A stretch of DNA of 64,000 nt, from NCBI RefSeq assembly GCF_000315625.1, contig NW_005434561.1:124001-188000 (forward strand), written 5' to 3'. Under the pieces are notes generated by a model. The model was not told the origin of the DNA. It made no database searches and saw only the letters and a list, made by a program, of their open reading frames with translations. This document shows, one piece after another, positions 45,748 through 60,782 of this stretch; the stretch's first letter is position 1, and each line of letters begins with the position of its first letter. Source of the stretch: Guillardia theta CCMP2712. Its lineage: Eukaryota > Protista > Cryptophyta. The translations under genes were made by a program, and so were the position numbers.

Positions 45748-48714
45748 TTGACTTGGTTGCTGGATGAGCAGCAGCCGATAGCTGAGAGGAGACACACAAT
45801 GACGTCTACCGTCCCCTGGCACGATGTCGGAGCCGGGTGCATTGCCCTGATTGGAACTGTTGCGCTATGTATCTTAGCCTCGCTGAGGCTGGACAACATG
45901 TCAAACATCCTCAAGAGCGGGAGTCTGAAGAAAGTGATCATCGAGTCAGAACAGAAGTTCGAACCACTCGGAAGATTTTGCAAGGACATCGTCCTCTTGT
46001 CACTGATCCTGCTGTTCACGTATCAGAGTGAGTACTACCCGGTCTTCCCTCACCTTGCCAAGGAGCATGACATGGATATGTTCTGGTTTGCGACTCTGCT
46101 CTTCCTGGCATACTCCTTCACCCGTTGGCAGAAGTCCAGGACGGACGACCTGCTGGGGCGGGAGCAGACGGAGGAGTGGAAGGGGTGGATGCAATTTATG
46201 TTCCTGCTGTACCATTACTGCGCTGCTTCAGAGGTCTACAACATCATCAGGGTGATGATCACGAGCTACCTGTGGATGACGGGGTTCGGGAACTTTTCTT
46301 TCTTCTACATCAAGAAGGACTACGGGATCGTGAGGGTGCTGCAGATGATGTGGAGGCTGAACTTTTTTGTCTTCCTGCTCATGATTGTGCAGGGCAACAC
46401 GTACATCCTCTACTACATCTGCCCCCTCCACACGTTCTTCTTCCTAGTGACATGGCTGACCATGCGGGTCTGCTCCAACCTCAACTACACGAAGTGGGGA
46501 GTGAGGATCAAACTGTCTGTGGTTGCAGTGGTCATCTTTGCGGTCTGGGATGGAGCTCCATGGCTCTTCGACCTTATCTTCGGCTCTTTCATGGGCCGGG
46601 CGCCATGCAAGGGAGCGACGTCTGGGTTCCTGTACGAGTGGTATTTCAGGACGACTTTGGATCACTGGAGCACGTTCCTGGGCATGATCTTTGCCCTCAA
46701 CTACCCCTTCACCAACATGTGGTTCAAGGAGCTTGCAAAACTTCCTGCTGCCTCGCAAGGAAAAGTCACCTTGGTCGTTGCCGCTGTCTCTTTGACGCTC
46801 ATGGTACTCTGGTTTTGCTTCATTTTTACCCTCCCGAAGCTCCAGTACAACAACACCAACGCCTTCCTGGCTCCGGTCCCCGTGCTCAGCTACATCCTCC
46901 TCAGGAACCTGACCCCCTACATGCGGACATGGTACTGCGACATCCTGCATGACTTCGGCAAGACGACTCTGGAGACTTACCTGCTGCAGCATCATGTCTG
47001 GCTGACCTCCAACGCCAAGACTCTCCTGCAGCTGATCCCCGGCAGCCCCAAGTGCAACTTCTTCGTCTGCACCATCCTCTTCTTCGCCTTGTCCCGCGAG
47101 ACGCACAGGCTGACCATGTCTTTGAGGGCGGTTGTGCTTCCAGACTCCAAGGTACCCTGCCTCAGGAACTCGTGCCTGTTCCTCGCGGCCCTCGGGGTCT
47201 CGTACGGCGTCTCCTTCCTGCTCGTTACTCAGGTTCAGGTCTTGTTCGTCCGGCTCTGCCTCCTTGTCCTGATCGCCATGGCCTGCACTGCTGGCGTCTT
47301 CCGCGTCCTCCAGCGGACCAGCTCGGAGGAGTACGGGAACGCGGTGAAAGACCTCAGCCTCCAGCTCTTCGAGAAGGCTCCAGTCATGGGCCTCATCTTC
47401 TTCCTCCTCATCATCTTCACCCTGCGAGTTTCCACCTCCTCCTCCAGCTACGTCCCTTCCCACCTCGACTGCCTCTCGGCCCTCAGCGCCGTCCCGGGCT
47501 CGTGGATCTCGACGCTCCCGCTGGCAGATAAGAAGGCCAGGAAGCTGAGGAGCGGAAACCACCTTGCCGTCTCTGAGGTCAGCTCCAGCTGGCATTCGGA
47601 CTCCATGACCGTGTCCAGCTGCCTCGGGGCTGGGAACGCCGCTAAGATGAACCAGGTGGCGTCTTGTGAGATGCGTGCGTTCCGCTTCGATGATGGGCCG
47701 GGCTCTCGAGCTCTCGGCTGCAACTTCCGCTTCCTGTCCAAGGACGCTGCTCGGGCTCAGCTGGGGAAGGGGACGCGGGTGGTGATCTTCGGGGATAGCG
47801 AAGCTCGCAACCTCTACTACGCGATCCGACGGGCCGTCGGGCTCCCGGTCGTCAACGTGAAGGCCCATGAAGACTTGACGCCCATCGGCAACTCCAGCGC
47901 TGCCATGCCGGACGTCGCGTTCCTGTGGACCCCTAAAGTCTCCGACGTCGCTGCCAGGCTGGCTACCGTCCTCGCAGACAGCAAGCCGCATGTGCTGGTG
48001 ATGAGCTTCGGGCTGTGGGACGCGTTGCATGTGCGGGACTTGAGCGCGTTCGAGCAGAGCCTGCAGGGGCTGAGCAGCAAGTTCCAGGAGTCGCTCCCCT
48101 CCCTCCCCGTCAAGCCGCTCACCGTCTGGATGCCCCCGCCCACCATCCGCGACCACCTGCTGACCTCCAAGGAGAAGAAGCAGTTCATGACGGAGGCGCT
48201 GGTTGCGGGCTACCGCCAGAAGGCCCAGCAGGTCCTCAGCTCCAGCGGCCTCCAGCAGTTCACTGTCAACTTTCCGCTGCTCACAGCTCTCGACGCCGCA
48301 CAGCTGGACTCGACGGACGGGGTGCACTACAGTCAGGTCTACTACGACACGGCAGCCCAGCTCTTTCTCAACAGCCTCGAACACGCACGGAAGGCGGGGA
48401 AGGTCCAAGTGAAGGAGGAGGCGGCCAAGGGGAAGGGGACAGGGGGCATGGCGGACGCCTTGGCCTCCCTGTGCATGCTCGTAGCGGTTGGCTTCATGCT
48501 CGTGGCGTGTGACGCGTACGGAGGTTTCCTCCCCCTCCTCGCTGTGACCTTCGGCAGCAGAGAGATGGTAAAGGCAATGGACCTCAAGTCCAACCCCTGC
48601 CCCTGCCTGCGATCCGCCGGGTCACTCGAGCGAGAGCACGGGGAGGACGAGGACGAGGGGGAGAAGGACGTGGAGACAGGCGAGGAGAAAATCCTTGCCA
48701 GCACTGCGACCTGA
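45748..48714 (+). CDS. Cas1p/RWA-like multi-TM O-acetyltransferase fused to C-terminal SGNH (PC-esterase-like) domain; 5' exons probably upstream
   Basis: REQTEEWKGWMQFMFLLYHY, SYLWMTGFGNF, WRLNFF, LYYICPLHT, EWYFRTTLDH, GKTTLETYLLQHHVWL; SGNH motifs IFGDSEARNLY, FGLWD, TDGVHY. Confidence 0.88.
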   Translation: MTWLLDEQQPIAERRHTMTSTVPWHDVGAGCIALIGTVALCILASLRLDNMSNILKSGSLKKVIIESEQKFEPLGRFCKDIVLLSLILLFTYQSEYYPVFPHLAKEHDMDMFWFATLLFLAYSFTRWQKSRTDDLLGREQTEEWKGWMQFMFLLYHYCAASEVYNIIRVMITSYLWMTGFGNFSFFYIKKDYGIVRVLQMMWRLNFFVFLLMIVQGNTYILYYICPLHTFFFLVTWLTMRVCSNLNYTKWGVRIKLSVVAVVIFAVWDGAPWLFDLIFGSFMGRAPCKGATSGFLYEWYFRTTLDHWSTFLGMIFALNYPFTNMWFKELAKLPAASQGKVTLVVAAVSLTLMVLWFCFIFTLPKLQYNNTNAFLAPVPVLSYILLRNLTPYMRTWYCDILHDFGKTTLETYLLQHHVWLTSNAKTLLQLIPGSPKCNFFVCTILFFALSRETHRLTMSLRAVVLPDSKVPCLRNSCLFLAALGVSYGVSFLLVTQVQVLFVRLCLLVLIAMACTAGVFRVLQRTSSEEYGNAVKDLSLQLFEKAPVMGLIFFLLIIFTLRVSTSSSSYVPSHLDCLSALSAVPGSWISTLPLADKKARKLRSGNHLAVSEVSSSWHSDSMTVSSCLGAGNAAKMNQVASCEMRAFRFDDGPGSRALGCNFRFLSKDAARAQLGKGTRVVIFGDSEARNLYYAIRRAVGLPVVNVKAHEDLTPIGNSSAAMPDVAFLWTPKVSDVAARLATVLADSKPHVLVMSFGLWDALHVRDLSAFEQSLQGLSSKFQESLPSLPVKPLTVWMPPPTIRDHLLTSKEKKQFMTEALVAGYRQKAQQVLSSSGLQQFTVNFPLLTALDAAQLDSTDGVHYSQVYYDTAAQLFLNSLEHARKAGKVQVKEEAAKGKGTGGMADALASLCMLVAVGFMLVACDAYGGFLPLLAVTFGSREMVKAMDLKSNPCPCLRSAGSLEREHGEDEDEGEKDVETGEEKILASTAT

Positions 48715-48945: not shown

Positions 48946-51293
48946 TCACTTTACAAATGTCGACCAGTAGCTCAAAATTCGCATCTCCCAGTCGGGGGGT
49001 CGACGAACCTGCAGCGATATCAAGGGGAGGAGCACAGGGGCAACAGGAGAGAGGGAAGGAAAAGAGGGAGAGGAAAGGAGTAGGGAGAACGGAGTGGACA
49101 GAGAGGAAGGAGGACGAGAGAGGAGAGCGGGAGGAGGGGATGGGGGGGGGGGAGGAGGGGTTGGGGAGAAAAGGGAGGGAGGAGGGAGGAGGGGATGATT
49201 CGACCGTCCTCTTCCTGGGATCTCTCTTGTGATATTTCTTTCGCGTTCCACATCCGTCGCCTCGTCCGTCGGAGATAACAAGTCGAACTCCTGTGACCCA
49301 ACAACATTCACCTCCTCCTCTTCCTCCTCTCATCCCTCCCGCCCTTTCTTCCGTTCCTCCTCCTGCCCTTCCTCGGCATCATCCTCCCCCTCACAACCGT
49401 AACCTTAACCTCCTCACCGCCGCATCGCTCTCCCCAACTCCTCTTTCCACATCCCCGCCCATCGTCACCTCCTCCTCCCACTCTTCTTCCCCACCGTCGT
49501 CTTCGTTCACCATTTCGCCTCTTCTCCTCTCCCTCACCGTCTCTGAGCTTGGCAAGGTCCTGAGCGAAGATCTCCGCTCCTTGCTTCCTCGGCTCTCCCT
49601 CCCCCTCCTCTCCTCGCAGCTCACAGTCCTCGTCGAGGAAGACGCATCTGCCGGGCCAGGCCCCGAAGTAGAGGAGGCGGTTGGCCTCGGAGAGCAGCCA
49701 CGTCAGCAGCGACTGGTCGGAGATGTTGGACGGAAGCACGAGCTTCTTTCCCAGCGAGTCTCTTTGCGGGATGTTTCTGTTCACGTAGACGACCTGCGCC
49801 CTCCTCGCCTGCGCCCTTCGCTCTCTCCGCCTGCTCTTCTCTGCTGGTGCTTCTGACGCTGACGCCACCGACCGTCTCGTGACCATCTCACGGTGGAGCG
49901 ACAGGAAATCCTCGCAGGTGAAGCTCTCGACGAGTTTGTTGTCGGCGATGGCACGCGACTCGGATCGGAAGTGAGCAAAAGACGCGACTGTCTCTGCCAT
50001 GCTCCCCATCCTCTCCTCCTCGTACCTTCTGTTCCTCAACAGCAACGGCTCTATCTCCTTTGCGGCCTCCTGACAACTGTTGTTCACAAGGACCAGAGCA
50101 GTCAGACTGGTGTTGCCTCTCAGCACCTCCACAAGTCCGTCCATCTTCTCATCGCTGCTGATCTCGTTGCAAGACAAGTCCAGGCTCTTCATCGTCTCGT
50201 TGCACTTGAGCACGGGCATCAGCTTTCGCACCCCTGCCATGGCGATCCGGTTCTGACTCAAGTCAAGGTGTCGCAGCCGTCGGTTCCCCTTCATCGCCTC
50301 CGCCATGTCCGTCAGCCCCACATCCCCTATCTTGTTGTCCCGGAGCCCCAGGCTAGTCAGCGAGCTGTTCCGCATCAGTGCCATGCGCATGACAGCCCCC
50401 AGCTGGTTCCCGTCTGAGCTGCACATCCTGCCGCCCTCGCTGAGGGAGAGCGAGAGGAGGGAGACCTGGTTCTTGGCGAGGGCGAAGGCGATGGAGCGGA
50501 AGCAGGAGGAGCTAAGGCCGTTGCGAGAGAGGTTGACGTGCTTCATGCTCCCGCTCTCCTTCAGGGCTTCCAGCAGCAAAGCCAACCCTCGCGGTCCCAG
50601 CTGGTTGTCGGAGAGGTCCAGGGACCGCAGAGTTGAGTTGACCTTGAGGGAGGAAGCGAGAGCCTCGGCTCCCAGGCATGAGATGAAGTTGGAGGAGAGG
50701 TCGAGCGAGGAGATGGTCTGGTTGCTGCCCACAAGCCTCGCGATGTGCCTGCATCCTTCATCCTTGAGCGACGCGTGGGAAAGCGAGAGGGAGACGAGGG
50801 AGAGGTTGGCTGGAGACTCGAGGATCGCCTTCACAATCCTCTCGCCTCCTCTCGGGAGCAGAGGAAGCCAGTTCACGTCCAGCTCAGTGAGGATGCCGTC
50901 GTCCTCCCTCGACTCCCTAAGTTTCCACGCTTCCAGCTGCTGCTCAGCTGTCTGCTTGGAGGGCACGAGGATGGGAGCTTCGTGCGGGAAGTGATGGGAG
51001 CTTTTGATGCGAGTAATCCGCTCCTCCAGCAGCTCCTCCAGGTCTCTTCCTCTTCCTCTGAATAGCTCCGCATGGCTGGCACGCCCATCTCGTAGACTTG
51101 CAATGAATCGTCGAGACGCTGCCTGCCATGTCGCTGTTGCTTCTTTGCGGAGATGCGAGTGGCGGTCTGAAGGGAGGTGGCGATGAGATGAAGGATGTTG
51201 AGAGGAGGGAGAGGGCTGAAGATGGAGAAGAGGAGAGGAGGAGGAGGAGGAGGAGGAGGAGGAGGAAACACATGCTGCGAACATGCGTATCAA
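48946..51293 (-). CDS. Ribonuclease-inhibitor-class leucine-rich repeat protein
   Basis: Repeated L..N.TL..LDLS.N.I...G...LA..L 28-aa units; 3' exons uncertain. Confidence 0.8.
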
Positions 51294-52898: not shown

Positions 52899-55800
52899 TA
52901 CTCAGATTGACTTCTGTTAATTGTCCAGGTTCTGTATCTCCAGCTGTGACGGAGCTGGAGGCGCCTCTCGTCCTCTCTCAGGGTTCCACACTCGCACGAA
53001 GTCTGTTCCGATCTCGATCGCTGAGACCGACCCAGACCTTCGTCGCTGCACCTGCCCCGTTCGCAAGCTGCTGCTCGAGGACGCGCGGTTGAAGGCGAGC
53101 CGAAGGCCCCGCCCATCGAAAGGCTCCACCTGGTCGGAGCCGATCTGAATGATTGAGAGTCTGGGGCGCACTTTCTGCTTCTTCCTGCAGGAACGCATCC
53201 AGCTGATGGCGTACGTCAGGATGCCACAGACCAAGACGCCGGCCAAGGCGTAGAGAGCGATGGTGGCCTGGAAAGGAAGGGAGAAAGAAGAGACAGGGGA
53301 TGAGGCCGCCAGGTTCGAGACAGTAGCGTCTGAGTTCTGCACTCCCAGCGGCAGTCCTCGCTTCTGAAACTCGTCGTTGAGGTTGTTCATCCTCAGCTTG
53401 CCCGCCACGCCTGCTGCGCTCTTCTCGTTGCTATCGTACACGCCAAACTTGACGTTGATGCCTGACCCGCCTCTTCGAGCTGCCTGCACGCTGTCGATCT
53501 GCACCAGCGACACGTCGACCGACGCCACTGTAGCCACAGAGATCCTGAAAGCCGTCCTCCTCGTCTCGTCGAACTGCGCGACAGAGAGGGGAAGACCGAC
53601 CGACATCTCAACTTTGTAGTTGCCCAGGTTGGGGGATGGGGATGACGGTGAAGATCCAGTGGAAGAAGGCGATGCCGACGACGAGTTCCCTTGAGTCTAA
53701 AGAAGAAGAATCAAACTCGAATTCGCACAAGAAAATGCGGACAATTGAAGCATAGACAGACGCTGAACAACACCAATCAAAAAACTCACCCTCGTGTCGC
53801 ATGGCAATGTTACGGTCCGATTCACGTAAATCGTGCGATTAACATAAACCGTCTGCGAGAATAAAAATTTCAGATAAATCTCCAAATGAATGAGATTTCG
53901 TATTGAAAGCTTATCTGACAAAAAAAAAGAAAAGAAAAAAGAAACAAACAATGCAAAATCAAACAACAACAAAAACGATGGTCACCTTGGTCTCGCAAGG
54001 CTCCATGATCGTCCTGTTGATGTACACCTCCTTGGGTACGTACACTGTGTTGTTGATGTACACCTCCACAGGCACCTCCACCGTCCGGTTGATGTACACC
54101 TCTACAGGGACCTCCACCGTCCGGTTGATGTACACCTCGTACGGCTCTCGGATCGTCCGGTTGATGTACACTTCAACAGGAACAACCACCGTCCGGTTCA
54201 CGTACACCAGCGTTGGCACCTCCACCGTCCGGTTGATGTACACTTCCGTCGGTACGTACACCGTGTTGTTGACATACACCGTCTGATCCGATCGTCCCCA
54301 CCCAGTACAAAACACGCCCGTCACACACTCGTACTTGCAAAGCAACCCAAAGCCCCTTTCCTCCTCTGCCCTTCCCCTCTCCTTCCCTCCCTCTCTCAGC
54401 CCCAAGCCCCTTCCTCCCAGACAAGCCCGTCCTCTCTCTCCCTCTCTCACCTTGGTCTCGCAAGGCTTCATGATCGTCCTGTTGATGTACACCTCTACAG
54501 GCACCTCCACCGTCCGGTTGATGTACACCTCTACAGGGACCTCCACCGTCCGGTTGATGTACACCTCGTACGGCTCTCGGATCGTCCGGTTGATGTACAC
54601 TTCAACAGGAACAACCACCGTCCGGTTCACGTACACCAGCGTTGGCACCTCCACCGTCCGGTTGATGTACACTTCCGTCGGTACGTACACCGTGTTGTTG
54701 ACATACACCGTCTGATCCGATCGTCCCCACCCAGTACAAAAACACGCCCGTCACACACTTCGTTGCGAGATCTCTCCCCAATACACTCACACTCGCACAC
54801 ACCCCTCCCTCCCTTCCTCCCNNNNNNNNNNNNNNNNNNNNNNNNNNNNNNNNNNNNNNNNNNNNNNNNNNNNNNNNNNNNNNNNNNNNNNNNNNNNNNN
54901 NNNNNNNNNNNNNNNNNNNNNNNNNNNNNNNNNNNNNNNNNNNNNNNNNNNNNNNNNNNNNNNNNNNNNNNNNNNNNNNNNNNNNNNNNNNNNNNCGGTA
55001 CCTCCACCGTCTGGTTCACGTACACTACCTTGGTCACCTCCACCGTCCGGTTGATGTACACTTCCGTCGGCACGTAGATCGTGTTGTTCACGTATACAAC
55101 CTGCCCCCCACCCCAAGCCGTCAGTCTCTCCGCCCCGTGCTCGTGCCTCCCCGCCACCTCCTCTCCTCCCTCCGTACCTTGTCTACGCTGCGGTTCACGA
55201 ATACCTCCTTCGGTACCTCCACCGTCCGGTTGATGTACACCACAACCTCCTTCTCCACCGTCCGGTTGATGTACACCTCGTACGGCTCTCGGATCGTCCG
55301 GTTGACGTATACGACCGTCGGCACCTCCACCGTCCGGTTCACGTACACCAGCGTTGGCACCTCCACCGTCCGGTTGATGTACACTTCCGTCGGCACGTAC
55401 ACCGTGTTGTTGACATACACCGTCTGATCCGATCGTCCCCACCCAGTACAAAAACACGCCCGTCACACACTCGTACTTGTAAAGCAACCCAAAGCCCCTT
55501 TCCTCCTCTGCCCTTCCCCTCTCCTTCCCTCCCTCTCTCAGCCCCAAGCCCCTTCCTCCCAGACAAGCCCGTCCTCTCTCTCCCTCTCTCACCTTGGTCT
55601 CGCAAGGCTTCATGATCGTCCTGTTGATGTACACCTCCTTGGGTACGTACACTGTGTTGTTGATGTACACCTCCACAGGCACCTCCACCGTCCTGTTGAT
55701 GTACACCTCCTTGGGTACGTACACTGTGTTGTTGATGTACACCTCCACAGGCACCTCCACCGTCCGGTTGATGTACACCTCTACAGGGACCTCCACCGTC

Positions 55801-58800
55801 CGGTTGATGTACACCTCGTACGGCTCTCGGATCGTCCGGTTGATGTACACTTCAACAGGAACAACCACCGTCCGGTTCACGTACACCAGCGTTGGCACCT
55901 CCACCGTCCGGTTGATGTACACTTCCGTCGGCACGTACACCGTGTTGTTGACATACACCGTCTGATCCGATCGTCCCCACCCAGTACAAAAACACGCCCG
56001 TCACACACTTCGTTGCGAGATCTCTCCCCAATACACTCTCGCACACACCCCTCCCCTCCCCTTCCTCCCTTTCTCGCCCCCTTGCCCCCCCCCCTCCCCC
56101 TCCAATACCCCCAACGTCCTCAAACGTGCCCCCAGCAATGCCCGCTCTCCCTCCCTCACCTTGGTCTCGCAAGGCTCCATGATCGTCCGGTTGATGTACA
56201 CCTCGTACGGCTCTCGGATCGTCCGGTTGACGTATACGACCGTCGGTACCTCCACCGTCTGGTTCACGTACACTACCTTGGTCACCTCCACCGTCCGGTT
56301 GATGTACACTTCCGTCGGCACGTAGATCGTGTTGTTCACGTATACAACCTGCCCCCCACCCCAAGCCGTCAGTCTCTCCGCCCCGTGCTCGTGCCTCCCC
56401 GCCACCTCCTCTCCTCCCTCCGTACCTTGTCTACGCTGCGGTTCACGAATACCTCCTTCGGTACCTCCACCGTCCGGTTGATGTACACCACAACCTCCTT
56501 CTCCACCGTCCGGTTGATGTACACCTCGTACGGCTCTCGGATCGTCCGGTTGACGTATACGACCGTCGGCACCTCCACCGTCCGGTTCACGTACACCAGC
56601 GTTGGCACCTCCACCGTCCGGTTGATGTACACATTTCTTGGAACATCAATTATTCGATCCTTGTAAATTGTATTGTTGACGTACACAACCTAGGTCGCCC
56701 TTTATTTTGATTGAATGAAATGAAATTCAGAATTCACCTTCTCGTTGCAAGGTAATTCGACTGTTCGGTTAATGTAGACCTCTTTTGTGATGTAAATGAT
56801 TCGATCAACATAAACTGTGTTGTTAATCTTTGAATAGTCAGAATGAATTCAATGTTAGATTCAATTTGTGTCTGTGTACCTTTGTTTTGTTCCTCTCGTG
56901 CTTATTATCATCAATAGCATTCTCATCATCTATAGAATGTTCATCGGTGAATTTGTTCAATTGCAAGCTTTTCATACCATCCTCGTCATCTTCTTCATCT
57001 TCTTGATCGCCTCCATTTTCTTCATCTGAATGAAGCATTAATTTCGCGCAATCCATGGCACATGTGGCTGCATGAAATCCGGGGTTGTAAAATTACCGTC
57101 AGCTTGTGAGTCTTCGCCATGTGATTTGTCGTCTTCGTTGTCATGATTTTCCTTGCTTTGATTCTTTTGATCCACTGGAGTTTTGTACACGTACACAATT
57201 TTTTCAATAGGACGATCAATGTATACAATTTTTCCACCTGCAAATGAGTCATGGATACAAGAAACTTCAATCGCTGGAGTCTTACAATCACTGGCACTTC
57301 AACAGTGCGATTCAAATAAACTATCCGGTCCTCCCCATATTTCTTGCCACTTTCCTCATCCACATAGACTTTTTTCTGAACCTGCCAAAAATTGCTTCAG
57401 TCGCATCATAGCGGATATGAAATGCGTCCGCTACTCACCTCTATTGGCACTTGTTCTTTGACTTTAATGAACTTTGGCACTTCAACTGTCACATTGAGGT
57501 ACACAGATTTTTCCACAGTGTTGTTTCGCACAATCTGTATTTGTGTAAGAACATGCCCAAAAAAAAAACAAAAGTCTTCAAAAATGTTCACCACTTTGCA
57601 GCATGAGCTCGACCCAACTTCAGACGCATATCCTTCTTGACATCTTGTACACACTGAAGAGTTCCCTTTGGAAAATGTCCCAGCTGGACAATCTACACAA
57701 GACGTGGATCCTTTTTCAGAGTATTGTCCAGCAGGACAAGGCATGCATGCAGAGCCCAACTGATAGAACCCAGCATTGCAAGTCCACGGACAAGAGTTCG
57801 TGCTCGAGCCTTTTATCTCCAAATATTCCGAGGAGTCTGGCTTGTTCGAGCACGGTATGCATTCCATAGAGTCAAATCCCACTTTAAATGTTCCCGGATT
57901 GCACGGCATACACGTTGACGACAGCTGTGACTTGAAATGTCCAGGCTCGCATACACAGTCTGCCCTATTCGGCCTTTCATTGCAAGAAGGAGGGGGACAC
58001 TGGTGTGGGGAAACAATTAGTACTAATGTGAACACTTCACATCGACTTACTCTCTGTGTGTTCAATTGCATATAGTTTGCAAGATCAATGGTCAGAATAG
58101 GGTATTAAGGTATGAGGCAGGGATTGCGGACTTACAACCTGGAAAATTTCAAATCATTATCGGGATTCGATGAAACATTGTCTTACATTCTATAAATAAA
58201 TCAGAAGCGGAGGAATTCCAATTAAAATCAAAAGTTTCAGTACCAACAAACTAAACGAATGTGACTGATCTTACCGGGTTGTCCTGTACACAAAGTGAGC
58301 CAAGCACAATTTCAAGAAATGAAGCAGGTGGTACTTACGTAGAAGCACTGAATAGAAGAAAGTTGGAATCCACGGGAGGAAAGCGCAATTCAAGTAAATG
58401 CTTCAAATTTCATGAGAAGGCAATGTAGACTTACATACTGCAAAGAAGAGGAATTTCGAAAGATTAAATGATCAGATCACTGTTCAACAAGGAAAGGCAA
58501 GAATCTTACATTCTTCTTGAAGGATGAAGGCTGTTTGGTTTAACGAGAAACAATCCAGTCAGATTAAAAAATGTTTTCAAACAGGATGAGAATTACCCCC
58601 TGGAGACGAAGGAGCAAAGAGAAGGAAAACCAAGGGTGCATTTCAGACCATAGGTGCAATCGTACAAAAGATCAAAATTAAAAGCTTACCGGCTGCAAAA
58701 ACAAAGTCAGCACAATGCTAAGAATGGAAAAACTAATCCATAAGATCAAGTGATCAAAGGTTCAAGGGATCAAGGATCAAGGGATCAAATATGTCATGCA

Positions 58801-59072
58801 CAAAAACTCTGACTCACCCCCTGTTGATGCGAAAATGAACAAAAAGTAGAAAAGAAGAAGATTCAGAAACTTGAAAGTATTCAAGAATAGAAACTTACGC
58901 AGAAGTGCTTGAAAGGGCGACCTGTAGGTGATGCCACGTTGTTGCATCCAGCATATTCACAATCAAACGTGTAATTGCATGCAATTACGTTAGACGCCAT
59001 GGAAAAGGGAACCATGAAAGAAAAGAAGAATCCCAGAAGGGATAACGTCATGATTTTCTCACTGGCAGTCAT
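52899..59072 (-). CDS. Large type-I surface glycoprotein: signal peptide, micro-exon-encoded Cys-rich tip, CxxC (ephrin-receptor-like/GCC2) repeats, long VYINRTVEVP repeat stalk, TM helix and short tail
   Basis: Signal MTLSLLGFFFSFMVPFSMA; CMPCNPGTFK, CPWTCNAGFY, CMPCPAGQYS; dozens of V(Y)(I/V)NRTVEVP units across duplicated exons; TM IALYALAGVLVCGILTYAISW followed by RKKQK; assembly gap inside. Confidence 0.7.
53985..56690 (-). repeat. Tandemly duplicated exon-intron cassettes encoding VYINRTVEVP repeats
   Basis: Near-identical exons and introns recur (e.g. 54285-54450 vs 55425-55592; 55100-55180 vs 56348-56428). Confidence 0.9.
54822..54995. other. Assembly gap (N run)
   Basis: Ns in sequence. 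Confidence 1.
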
Positions 59073-60782
59073 CGATGATATATCTATCAGAGGATGTTCA
59101 TGGTGAGATCTTGCATCTCATGAGCGAAGACTCTGCATCGCTCGGACCGTCTCCTTGCTCGGGACTGCCGTGCATGATAGGTGCAAACTTTCTAGTTAGA
59201 ATGCCACCCATTGACCACCCCCTCATTTTACATGTTTTGGACGGGTGTGTGGGAAAATGTGCAAGGGTATTGCATTTCGGCTGACGGGGGGTTGTTTCTG
59301 AAATGGGTGAAATTGGGAAATGAGGGGGTACTATCATATAGCAAGGTCCTAGAGGAGGGTGGGTTGTCCTGGTAGGAGCAAACCCGACAAAGAAGAGCTT
59401 GTCGAAGAGTTCTCATGCGCCACCCCCCCCCTGTGACAGGACCCCTGGGATACAATGAGTACCCGTCCATCTCTGCTTGAAAGAACTGGAATAGGACCCC
59501 TTCGGCATGTCTGCACCCTTTCGAGGCACAGCCTCCCCACAGCCTTGTGGTAAGAGTATATCCCCCAGGCAAAAATTTGAAATGGTGGAGAGCAAGATAT
59601 GTACTACCCACCAGATGTCGTGGAGTCAACATATGAAAGATGGGGTACTTGTAAATAAAAGAGGCTCCAGCCGTATCTTTTTTTGAATCTTCCAGTCAAA
59701 CCGATAAAATGTAATACAATTATGTGATTTCAAAGTTTCTAGAAACCCCCGTACAGTTTGGAGCTACTTATAAAAAAAAACGCAGAAAGGCATATGACCC
59801 GTGACAAACATAAAATCTTATAAGTTTAAAAGGGCTTTGTAAAGTTGGGACGGCCGCAGCCCGGAATTCAGAATCCGGCCGAACTGGAAAATGGCCCAGG
59901 ACTCACGGGTAGAGACAAGCCGCTCGTATTATTGATTTTTAAATTAACTTTGAGTAAAATTTTGACCCCCTAGCCCACTATGGAGGCCGGGTCACAGTCC
60001 ATGATTACGACTAAAGATTACAACTAGGCTGTGATACAGAAGATACACCGCACAGCCGCTGAATCATGTGATGCCCGGCGGTCGGAACGTGACTCGTAAC
60101 TCGAGTCGTGGCCCGGACTCAAAGTTAAGTGAAAGCCGGTACTGTACGGTATATGAGTAAAGTATATGACCGAAAGAGTTTGCTGCGCGGCGACTCAGCG
60201 GGCGGCCTTGAAAGAGACTCGGCGGCTTGAAAACTGAAGTACCGTCAGTCAAGTTATACGGCCAGTGACCGACCTCTCATCCGATATGATCAGTGCCGCG
60301 CCGCGCACCCGGCCGGCCCTGAGCTCTGGTTTACTACGGCGGTACTGCTACCGGGTGACCCGGTCCGTTCAACTAGCCTGTAGTAGTACTATAAAAAGTA
60401 CTAACTTAGTAAGTCATCCGATCCGATCATCTGGTGCTTCCGTCTCACGGCGTGGCACACTGTGACACGCAGCCTGACACTCCGCCGGACTCGGCCGCTC
60501 CGAGCTCGGCCCCGGCCGGGGATTCCGACCGACGTCGGCGTGCCGCGTGCAGGAAAGACAGTACTAAGAATCACCCCTGCCCATCCTGGCAGTGGGCCCA
60601 CCGTCGGAGTCCGACGGTCGGCGGCCCGCCACTCCGGCAAACCGTTTTATTTGACCGCGTCGGTTGTGTAAATCATATCAGTCTTGACAAATGTTGGAGA
60701 ATGTGTATGCGCGGAATTGCGACAAGAGAGGAAGAAATGCAGTAGAGAACTTTCAGCTGCGGATTGCAATGACGATGATGCA

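What the first reader, a model, noticed from the sequence alone, without database searches (positions are those of the whole stretch)
58000..58899. Array of ten codon-aligned micro-exons, seven of them a single codon, at the tip of a surface protein
Seen: this apparently non-coding 900 bp is, on the minus strand, a run of short GT(A/G)A..YAG introns separated by tiny exons. They are 58820-58818 GGG, 58692-58690 CCG, 58599-58597 GGG, 58530-58510 (21 nt), 58437-58435 TAT, 58347-58339 TGCTTCTAC, 58283-58275 GACAACCCG, 58189-58187 AAT, 58138-58136 GTT and 58053-58051 AGA. All are multiples of 3 and phase 0. Splicing gives ...PFKHFC-G-P-G-PSSFKKN-Y-CFY-DNP-N-V-R-CPPPSC with no stop. Known: schistosome micro-exon genes diversify secreted proteins by skipping symmetric exons. 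Inference: a splicing-based system that could vary the distal loop of a surface glycoprotein residue by residue (up to 2^10 combinations), for example to evade viral attachment. Standard gene callers would miss it.
Basis: partly seen in the sequence, partly recalled or inferred. Interest (0 to 1): 0.88.

Follow-up and report, generated by a model that had tools for sequence, protein, structure and literature searches.

The report
Ten spliced micro-exons, algal surface protein
An algal cell-surface protein gene writes 20 amino acids of its outer tip through ten tiny exons, seven of them one codon long; RNA shows all ten joined in order and a wild relative keeps them unchanged, so this is a fixed and very odd gene layout, not the proposed mix-and-match diversifier.

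Summary
All ten micro-exons are real (seven 3-nt, two 9-nt, one 21-nt; 60 nt, all phase 0). A transcript contig from one study joins all ten in order, letter for letter; contigs from a second study cover them in pieces. The only variants seen were retention of intron 3 or 10, both containing stops. No skipping was seen, though contigs drop rare forms. An environmental relative keeps the same layout with 0/60 micro-exon changes, against 7.9% in introns and 7.1% in flanking exons, which argues against an arms-race loop. The gene encodes a probable type I surface protein (signal peptide, Cys-rich repeats, SEA-like fold, one transmembrane helix) of Guillardia theta. Chains of 3-nt exons recur at about 20 loci, one with about 85 exons; 2-nt and 4-nt controls give almost nothing outside tandem repeats. 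All seven arrays parsed lie between two cysteine codons. This scan already found such arrays on other DNA of this genome, in kinase-RING and Roco-TIR genes. New here: an unrelated extracellular protein, plus orthologue evidence for purifying selection. No paper searched describes the layout.

The parts
58899..59051 (-). Exon 1 coding part (51 aa): probable signal peptide, then Cys25, 31, 36 and 51; ends on a Cys codon, phase 0. The transcript starts at or above 59180.
   Evidence: hydropathy 1.7; no Pfam match
58818..58820 (-). micro-exon 1, GGG (Gly)
   Evidence: identical in L042
58690..58692 (-). micro-exon 2, CCG (Pro)
58600..58689 (-). intron 3 (90 nt, in-frame stop); retained in one X1 contig with intron 2 and upstream removed and intron 4 removed
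58597..58599 (-). micro-exon 3, GGG (Gly); GTAAT donor
58510..58530 (-). micro-exon 4, 21 nt (PSSFKKN)
   Evidence: mapped directly in X1 and X3
58435..58437 (-). micro-exon 5, TAT (Tyr)
58339..58347 (-). micro-exon 6, 9 nt (Cys-Phe-Tyr); carries Cys63
58275..58283 (-). micro-exon 7, 9 nt (Asp-Asn-Pro)
58187..58189 (-). micro-exon 8, AAT (Asn)
58136..58138 (-). micro-exon 9, GTT (Val)
58054..58135 (-). intron 10 (82 nt, stop); retained in one X1 contig with introns 5-9 and 11 already removed
58051..58053 (-). micro-exon 10, AGA (Arg); joint 58051/57999 seen directly
57592..57999 (-). Exon 12 (136 aa): starts on a Cys codon; EGF-like spacing, then Ephrin_rec_like / TNFR_ELAPOR1 Cys-rich repeats
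   Evidence: Pfam E 1e-9 and 4e-8; best PDB sequence match Chlamydomonas-type mastigoneme protein Mst1, 8tx1, E 3e-16; joint 57592/57534 in RNA
53790..57534 (-). Multi-exon stalk: acidic segment and V-Y-I-N-R-T-V-E-V-P type repeats rich in N-glycosylation sequons; includes an assembly gap near 54820-54995 and a 1-base frameshift in the reference near 57230
   Evidence: Pfam IMCp E 1e-7
52917..53696 (-). Last exon: Ser/Pro linker, ferredoxin-like SEA/MAD-type domain (about 53636-53310), one transmembrane helix (about 53261-53205), cytoplasmic tail
   Evidence: pLDDT 83; best fold matches CELSR1 Z 8.3, dystroglycan complex 7.8, PCDH15 7.5, only middling; hydropathy 2.25; Hanusia phi homologue 39%

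Best explanation
A constitutively spliced micro-exon array. The 20 residues between Cys51 and Cys72 at the tip of a type I surface glycoprotein are encoded by ten codon-aligned exons, and all ten are joined in the main mRNA (shown). Splicing most likely works by intron definition. Each 48-125 nt intron is removed on its own, so a 3-nt exon is fused to a neighbour rather than recognised alone. Partly spliced contigs lacking every nearby intron but one show this independence. Strong donors and AG-poor zones before each acceptor would favour the nearest acceptor and so inclusion (inferred). The cost is slow introns (3 and 10) whose retention gives stop-truncated products. The loop is under purifying selection (shown against one relative). 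The layout is a genome-wide habit of this alga: loops between two cysteines are written in units of one intron plus one codon. These probably grew by duplication or gain of such units, so length varies between genes over evolution, not between transcripts (inferred).
For: RNA contigs of two studies. Conservation in L042: 0/60 changes vs 65/822 in introns (Fisher P=0.018) and 40/561 in flanking exons (P=0.025). AG in the last 40 nt of the introns: 4 observed vs 12.5 expected, P=0.0014. GTRAG donors in 10/11 array introns vs 2/6 downstream introns. Genome-wide pair pattern: 136 hits for 3-nt exons vs 6 for the reversed control, 21 for 4-nt (all in three tandem repeats) and 2 for 2-nt. Six further arrays parsed, mostly 3-nt exons; all seven begin after and end before a Cys codon. 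Intron retention exceeds skipping in nearly all eukaryotes studied, G. theta included in the set (PMC6142364). Detained introns beside constitutive plant microexons are described in PMC8831610.
Against: Assembled contigs drop rare variants, so skipping at low frequency is invisible, and only two studies covered the array. Only one orthologue was found, and the conservation P values are modest. Similarity among this gene's own introns is weak (introns 6/7/8, z about 3.5 among 55 pairs), so the duplication origin is not shown here. The boundaries of the other six arrays rest on sequence only.
Confidence: 0.8

Rival explanations
1. One reading: MEG-like combinatorial skipping varies the exposed tip residue by residue, for example against viral attachment.
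For: All exons are symmetric phase 0, so any skip keeps the frame. The loop lies at the N-terminal tip of a surface protein. Schistosome MEGs do this (PMC4350168). Contigs cannot show rare forms.
Against: No skipping contig in two studies. The loop is the most conserved part of the region, with no sign of diversifying selection. It holds a cysteine whose loss would leave an odd number among the first ten (inference). Short introns and AG-poor zones favour inclusion.
Confidence: 0.1
2. The array's role is regulatory: eleven serial introns act as a splicing-efficiency gate, and retention of intron 3 or 10 switches off the full protein or releases short secreted peptides (56 or 86 aa).
For: Retained forms survive as contigs in X1, with depth 99 vs 229 for the spliced path at intron 3 and 106 for intron 10. 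A few X13 raw reads also lie in intron 3. X3 shows only the spliced form.
Against: Contig depth is a poor measure of abundance, and these may be nuclear intermediates. No condition data. Both retained introns contain stops, as expected for unproductive forms. This reading can hold alongside the best explanation.
Confidence: 0.15
3. The introns are a neutral relic of a burst of intron gain into one stretch; codon alignment is an accident of the insertion mechanism and has no present function.
For: Arrays at several other loci share a look-alike intron body (C33, C70, C72, C118, C146; seen by eye). All introns, phases and splice sites are retained in the relative, as any intron would be.
Against: It does not explain why arrays sit exactly between two Cys codons in seven of seven genes of unlike architecture. 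This gene's introns have no DNA match elsewhere in the genome and only one 28-nt match to other arrays.
Confidence: 0.3

Closest known systems
Schistosome micro-exon genes (MEGs)
   Same: Run of 10 or more very short symmetric exons after a signal-peptide exon, in an exported protein; hard to annotate (10.1101/2023.06.21.545858, PMC4350168).
   Different: MEG exons are mostly about 15 bp, with 0.1-5 kb introns, and make up most of the coding sequence; they are alternatively spliced and have raised dN/dS. Here 7 of 10 exons are one codon, introns are 48-125 nt, the array is only 20 residues of a long membrane protein, no skipping was seen and the loop is invariant.
Constitutive plant microexons (1-15 nt; AP2, invertase, APC11)
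   Same: Conserved, mostly included, missed by annotation, with detained flanking introns (PMC8831610).
   Different: The passages read describe isolated microexons, most often 9 nt and about half multiples of three, not chains of single-codon exons.
One-codon exon arrays in G. theta kinase-RING, U-box and Roco-TIR genes
   Same: Same genome, 3-nt phase-0 exons, short introns with AG-poor 3' ends, array bracketed by Cys codons, no skipping reported.
   Different: Five of the six end in a CC-N/I-C motif (C33 by eye) and those with a recognisable domain lead to intracellular ones (U-box at C120). This array lacks that motif, follows a signal peptide and precedes extracellular Cys-rich repeats; no sequence homology was detected.
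Ephrin_rec_like / ELAPOR1 / Mst1-type Cys-rich surface proteins
   Same: Exon 12 repeats.
   Different: Domain-level match only; the N-terminal domain holding the array has no detected relative.

Membership tests
Micro-exon gene (schistosome MEG type) | Run of very short symmetric (3n, same phase) exons | tested here: met
   10 exons, all phase 0, RNA-confirmed
Micro-exon gene (schistosome MEG type) | Micro-exons make up most of the coding region | tested here: not met
   60 nt of a gene spanning about 6.1 kb with long exons
Micro-exon gene (schistosome MEG type) | Long flanking introns (0.1-5 kb) | tested here: not met
   48-125 nt
Micro-exon gene (schistosome MEG type) | Isoform pool by exon skipping | tested here: inconclusive
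   None seen in contigs of two studies; rare forms not detectable; raw reads too few
Micro-exon gene (schistosome MEG type) | Raised dN/dS in the mature region | tested here: not met
   0 changes in 60 nt in L042; flanking exons, not the array, carry the amino-acid changes
Micro-exon gene (schistosome MEG type) | Signal peptide, exported product | tested here: inconclusive
   Hydrophobic N-terminus by hydropathy only; also a C-terminal transmembrane helix
Constitutive microexons (plant type) | Internal exon of 15 nt or less included in the major transcript | tested here: met
   9 of the 10 exons are 9 nt or less and all are in the X3 contig
Constitutive microexons (plant type) | Conserved across lineages | tested here: inconclusive
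   Identical in one close relative; no N-terminal sequence of a distant orthologue found
G. theta CC-N-C one-codon array family (kinase-RING / Roco-TIR) | Array bracketed by Cys codons | tested here: met
G. theta CC-N-C one-codon array family (kinase-RING / Roco-TIR) | Terminal CC-N micro-exons and a downstream intracellular signalling domain | tested here: not met
   Ends N-V-R, followed by extracellular Cys-rich repeats
Type I membrane surface protein | Signal peptide, ectodomain, single transmembrane helix, cytoplasmic tail in one open frame | tested here: inconclusive
   All parts present, but the reference has a 1-base frameshift near 57230 that the relative lacks and an assembly gap; localisation untested

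The most novel reading that the evidence does not exclude
Under conditions not sampled (virus infection, stress), single-codon exons are skipped in combinations, giving residue-by-residue variation of a surface protein tip. The roughly 20 arrays of this alga, up to about 85 exons long, would then form a splicing-based receptor diversification system in a unicellular eukaryote.
Probability: 0.1. Interest if true: 0.92.

Novelty: new variant of a known kind. Interest (0 to 1): 0.64.

Why it matters
Chains of exons one codon long, accurately spliced, push the lower limit of exon size from isolated cases to whole protein segments. They give a tractable test of intron-definition splicing and of the order of intron removal. 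This locus shows that the layout is not confined to one intracellular gene family: it also builds a Cys-bounded loop in an unrelated surface protein, which points to a general process in cryptophyte genomes. It also supplies orthologue evidence that such a loop is held constant. In practice, public models of this reference alga probably lack the N-termini of such genes.

Tried and rejected
Chance or artefact: rejected by shuffles, RNA and 2-nt/4-nt controls. Direct joining of 58899 to 57999: no contig shows it. Relatives of exon 1: none in the genome, Pfam (47) or ESM Atlas (best 0.83, noise level). The three HMMER hits are unrelated repeat proteins. Exon 12 alone found nothing at its own length; the longer open frame found the relative. 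JGI metagenome loci L043-L047 are generic Cys-rich proteins with open frames upstream and no array. A single 3-nt exon pattern is not enriched genome-wide (543 vs 632 reversed), so only chains are. That listing ended before C17, so the sister gene stayed untested. Literature: no paper for micro-exon + Guillardia, microexon + cryptophyte, or single-codon exon arrays; the original MEG paper was not held.

Full report
Source. The window is G000:C113:124001-188000 of an 87.1 Mb, 669-contig eukaryotic assembly. That size matches Guillardia theta CCMP2712 (my own knowledge). A G. theta model and a Hanusia phi protein are the named relatives of this gene's C-terminus.

Observation. On the minus strand, exon 1 (ATG 59051 to 58899) is followed by ten exons of 3, 3, 3, 21, 3, 9, 9, 3, 3 and 3 nt, then exon 12 from 57999. 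The introns are 48-125 nt, all GT..YAG, and ten of eleven donors are GTRAG. YAG-NNN-GTRA occurs 7 times against 0.10 expected, with a maximum of 2 in 2000 shuffles; the spliced frame is open for 207 codons.

RNA. Laying four runs gave one 1356-nt contig in X3 (study P2) running from 59179 through exon 1, the 21-nt exon, exon 12 and beyond. The letters between the mapped pieces equal exons 2-4 and exons 6-11 exactly. X1 (study P1) shows the same joins in pieces, plus two variant contigs: one keeps intron 3, the other keeps intron 10, each with the neighbouring introns removed. Both retained introns contain stops and would give products of 56 and 86 residues. No contig skips a micro-exon or joins 58899 to 57999. 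Limits: these runs are only guessed to be RNA (the splice joints support it), contigs drop rare forms, contig depth is a poor measure of level, and the raw-read run gave only 15 reads of up to 60 nt. Inclusion is shown; absence of rare skipping is not.

Conservation. The exon-12 open frame found a 90% identical protein on an ENA metagenome contig (L042), whose DNA covers the whole array. All ten exons and their GT/AG ends are in place. Substitutions: 0/60 in micro-exons, 65/822 in introns (Fisher P=0.018) and 40/561 in exons 1 and 12 (P=0.025). The flanking exons show 19 amino-acid changes in 186 codons. The array is thus the least variable part of the region, which is not what an arms-race loop would show; schistosome MEGs have raised dN/dS (PMC4350168).

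The protein. It has a hydrophobic N-terminus and Cys at 25, 31, 36, 51, 63, 72, 77, 86 and 88. Cys63 lies in a micro-exon, and Cys63 to the next Cys at 101 has EGF-like spacing (inference). Then come Ephrin_rec_like / TNFR_ELAPOR1 repeats (best PDB sequence match the mastigoneme protein Mst1) and a long sequon-rich repeat stalk (IMCp). The last exon holds a ferredoxin-like domain (pLDDT 83) whose best, middling, fold matches are membrane-proximal SEA/MAD domains (CELSR1 Z 8.3), one transmembrane helix and a tail. A type I surface glycoprotein is the best reading. One caveat: the reference has one A fewer than L042 near 57230, shifting the frame; a homopolymer assembly error is likely but untested. 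A sister gene lies at C17 (exon 12 37%, last exon 42%). The public model GUITHDRAFT_135760 is probably that gene, and it begins at the equivalent of the first Cys of exon 12 without a signal peptide. This suggests a missed N-terminus, but I could not read its DNA.

Genome context. Two consecutive 3-nt exons with strong sites match 136 times against 6 for the reversed pattern. About 70 of the 100 listed matches fall in intron-like clusters, and together point to about 20 loci. The same pattern with 4-nt exons gives only three tandem repeats, and with 2-nt exons two hits. I parsed six other arrays: 8 to about 87 exons, overwhelmingly 3 nt. All seven arrays start after a Cys codon and end before one. 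Five of the other six end in CC-N/I (C33 by eye), and at least one leads to a U-box; this gene shares neither feature nor detectable sequence with them. Earlier notes of this scan describe such arrays in kinase-RING and Roco-TIR genes on other contigs and also report no skipping. My parsing agrees on the layout; I did not re-test their RNA claims.

Mechanism. Shown: full inclusion in the main transcript, independent removal of single introns, and conservation of the loop. Measured correlates: stronger donors than in the gene's downstream introns (10/11 vs 2/6 GTRAG) and AG depletion before acceptors (4 vs 12.5, P=0.0014). Inferred: splicing by intron definition, in which a 3-nt exon becomes part of a longer exon as soon as one flanking intron leaves, with first-AG choice enforcing inclusion. 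This fits the dominance of retention over skipping across eukaryotes (PMC6142364) and detained introns beside plant microexons (PMC8831610). The origin is inferred, not shown: growth by units of one intron plus one codon. Look-alike introns at other loci and weak similarity among introns 6, 7 and 8 here are hints only.

Comparison and novelty. It resembles a MEG in layout but fails three tested MEG features (share of coding sequence, intron length, raised dN/dS), and skipping was not seen, so it is not filed as one. It works like constitutive microexons taken to an extreme. No searched paper describes chains of single-codon exons; isolated 3-nt exons are reported in a dinoflagellate (PMC12584245). 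I rate it a new variant of a known kind, interest 0.64.

Left out. 

Noticed in passing
L032:322-7770 (G000:C105:49820-57270, +): Array of about 85 micro-exons, about 75 of them 3 nt, spelling hydrophobic Trp/Leu/Ala-rich stretches; the longest array seen here; sequence evidence only.
   Followed up: partly
L033, L034, L035, L037, L038 (C19, C112, C120, C22, C33): Five more arrays of 8-36 micro-exons, each between two Cys codons; the C120 gene ends in a U-box.
   Followed up: partly
G000 C12:596400, C14:526400, C29:208900, C33:175300, C56:349200, C60:260100, C66:309200, C70:335900, C72:415900, C92:12400, C116:130900, C118:17100, C146:6300-10200, C147:16600, C221:62700, C228:32800: Further candidate arrays from the pattern lists; several share a look-alike intron body ending in a CTGAC branch-like motif. 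Not fetched.
   Followed up: no
window 57228-57232 (-): The reference has one A fewer than the relative L042 in exon 15, shifting the frame before the stalk and membrane anchor; assembly error or strain allele.
   Followed up: partly
G000:C17:131417-134409 (-); P0010: Sister gene with the same architecture; its probable public model starts at the exon-12-equivalent Cys without a signal peptide, so an unannotated micro-exon array may lie upstream.
   Followed up: partly
window 53790-56700 (-): The stalk repeats come as near-identical exon+intron blocks with purine-rich introns, around an assembly gap, so copy number is uncertain.
   Followed up: no
window 45748-48714 (+): 988-codon open frame with a Cas1_AcylT O-acetyltransferase domain (E 1e-79).
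   Followed up: partly
window 49308-51293 (-): 661-codon open frame with LRR_6 leucine-rich repeats.
   Followed up: partly
window 13000-36000: Lower-GC block (0.39-0.48 vs about 0.55 on the flanks); earlier scan notes call it a tyrosine-recombinase polinton-like virus. Not examined.
   Followed up: no
window 59938-60631: Three short inverted repeats (18-22 nt arms) upstream of the gene, two GC-rich; possibly a small transposon remnant.
   Followed up: no
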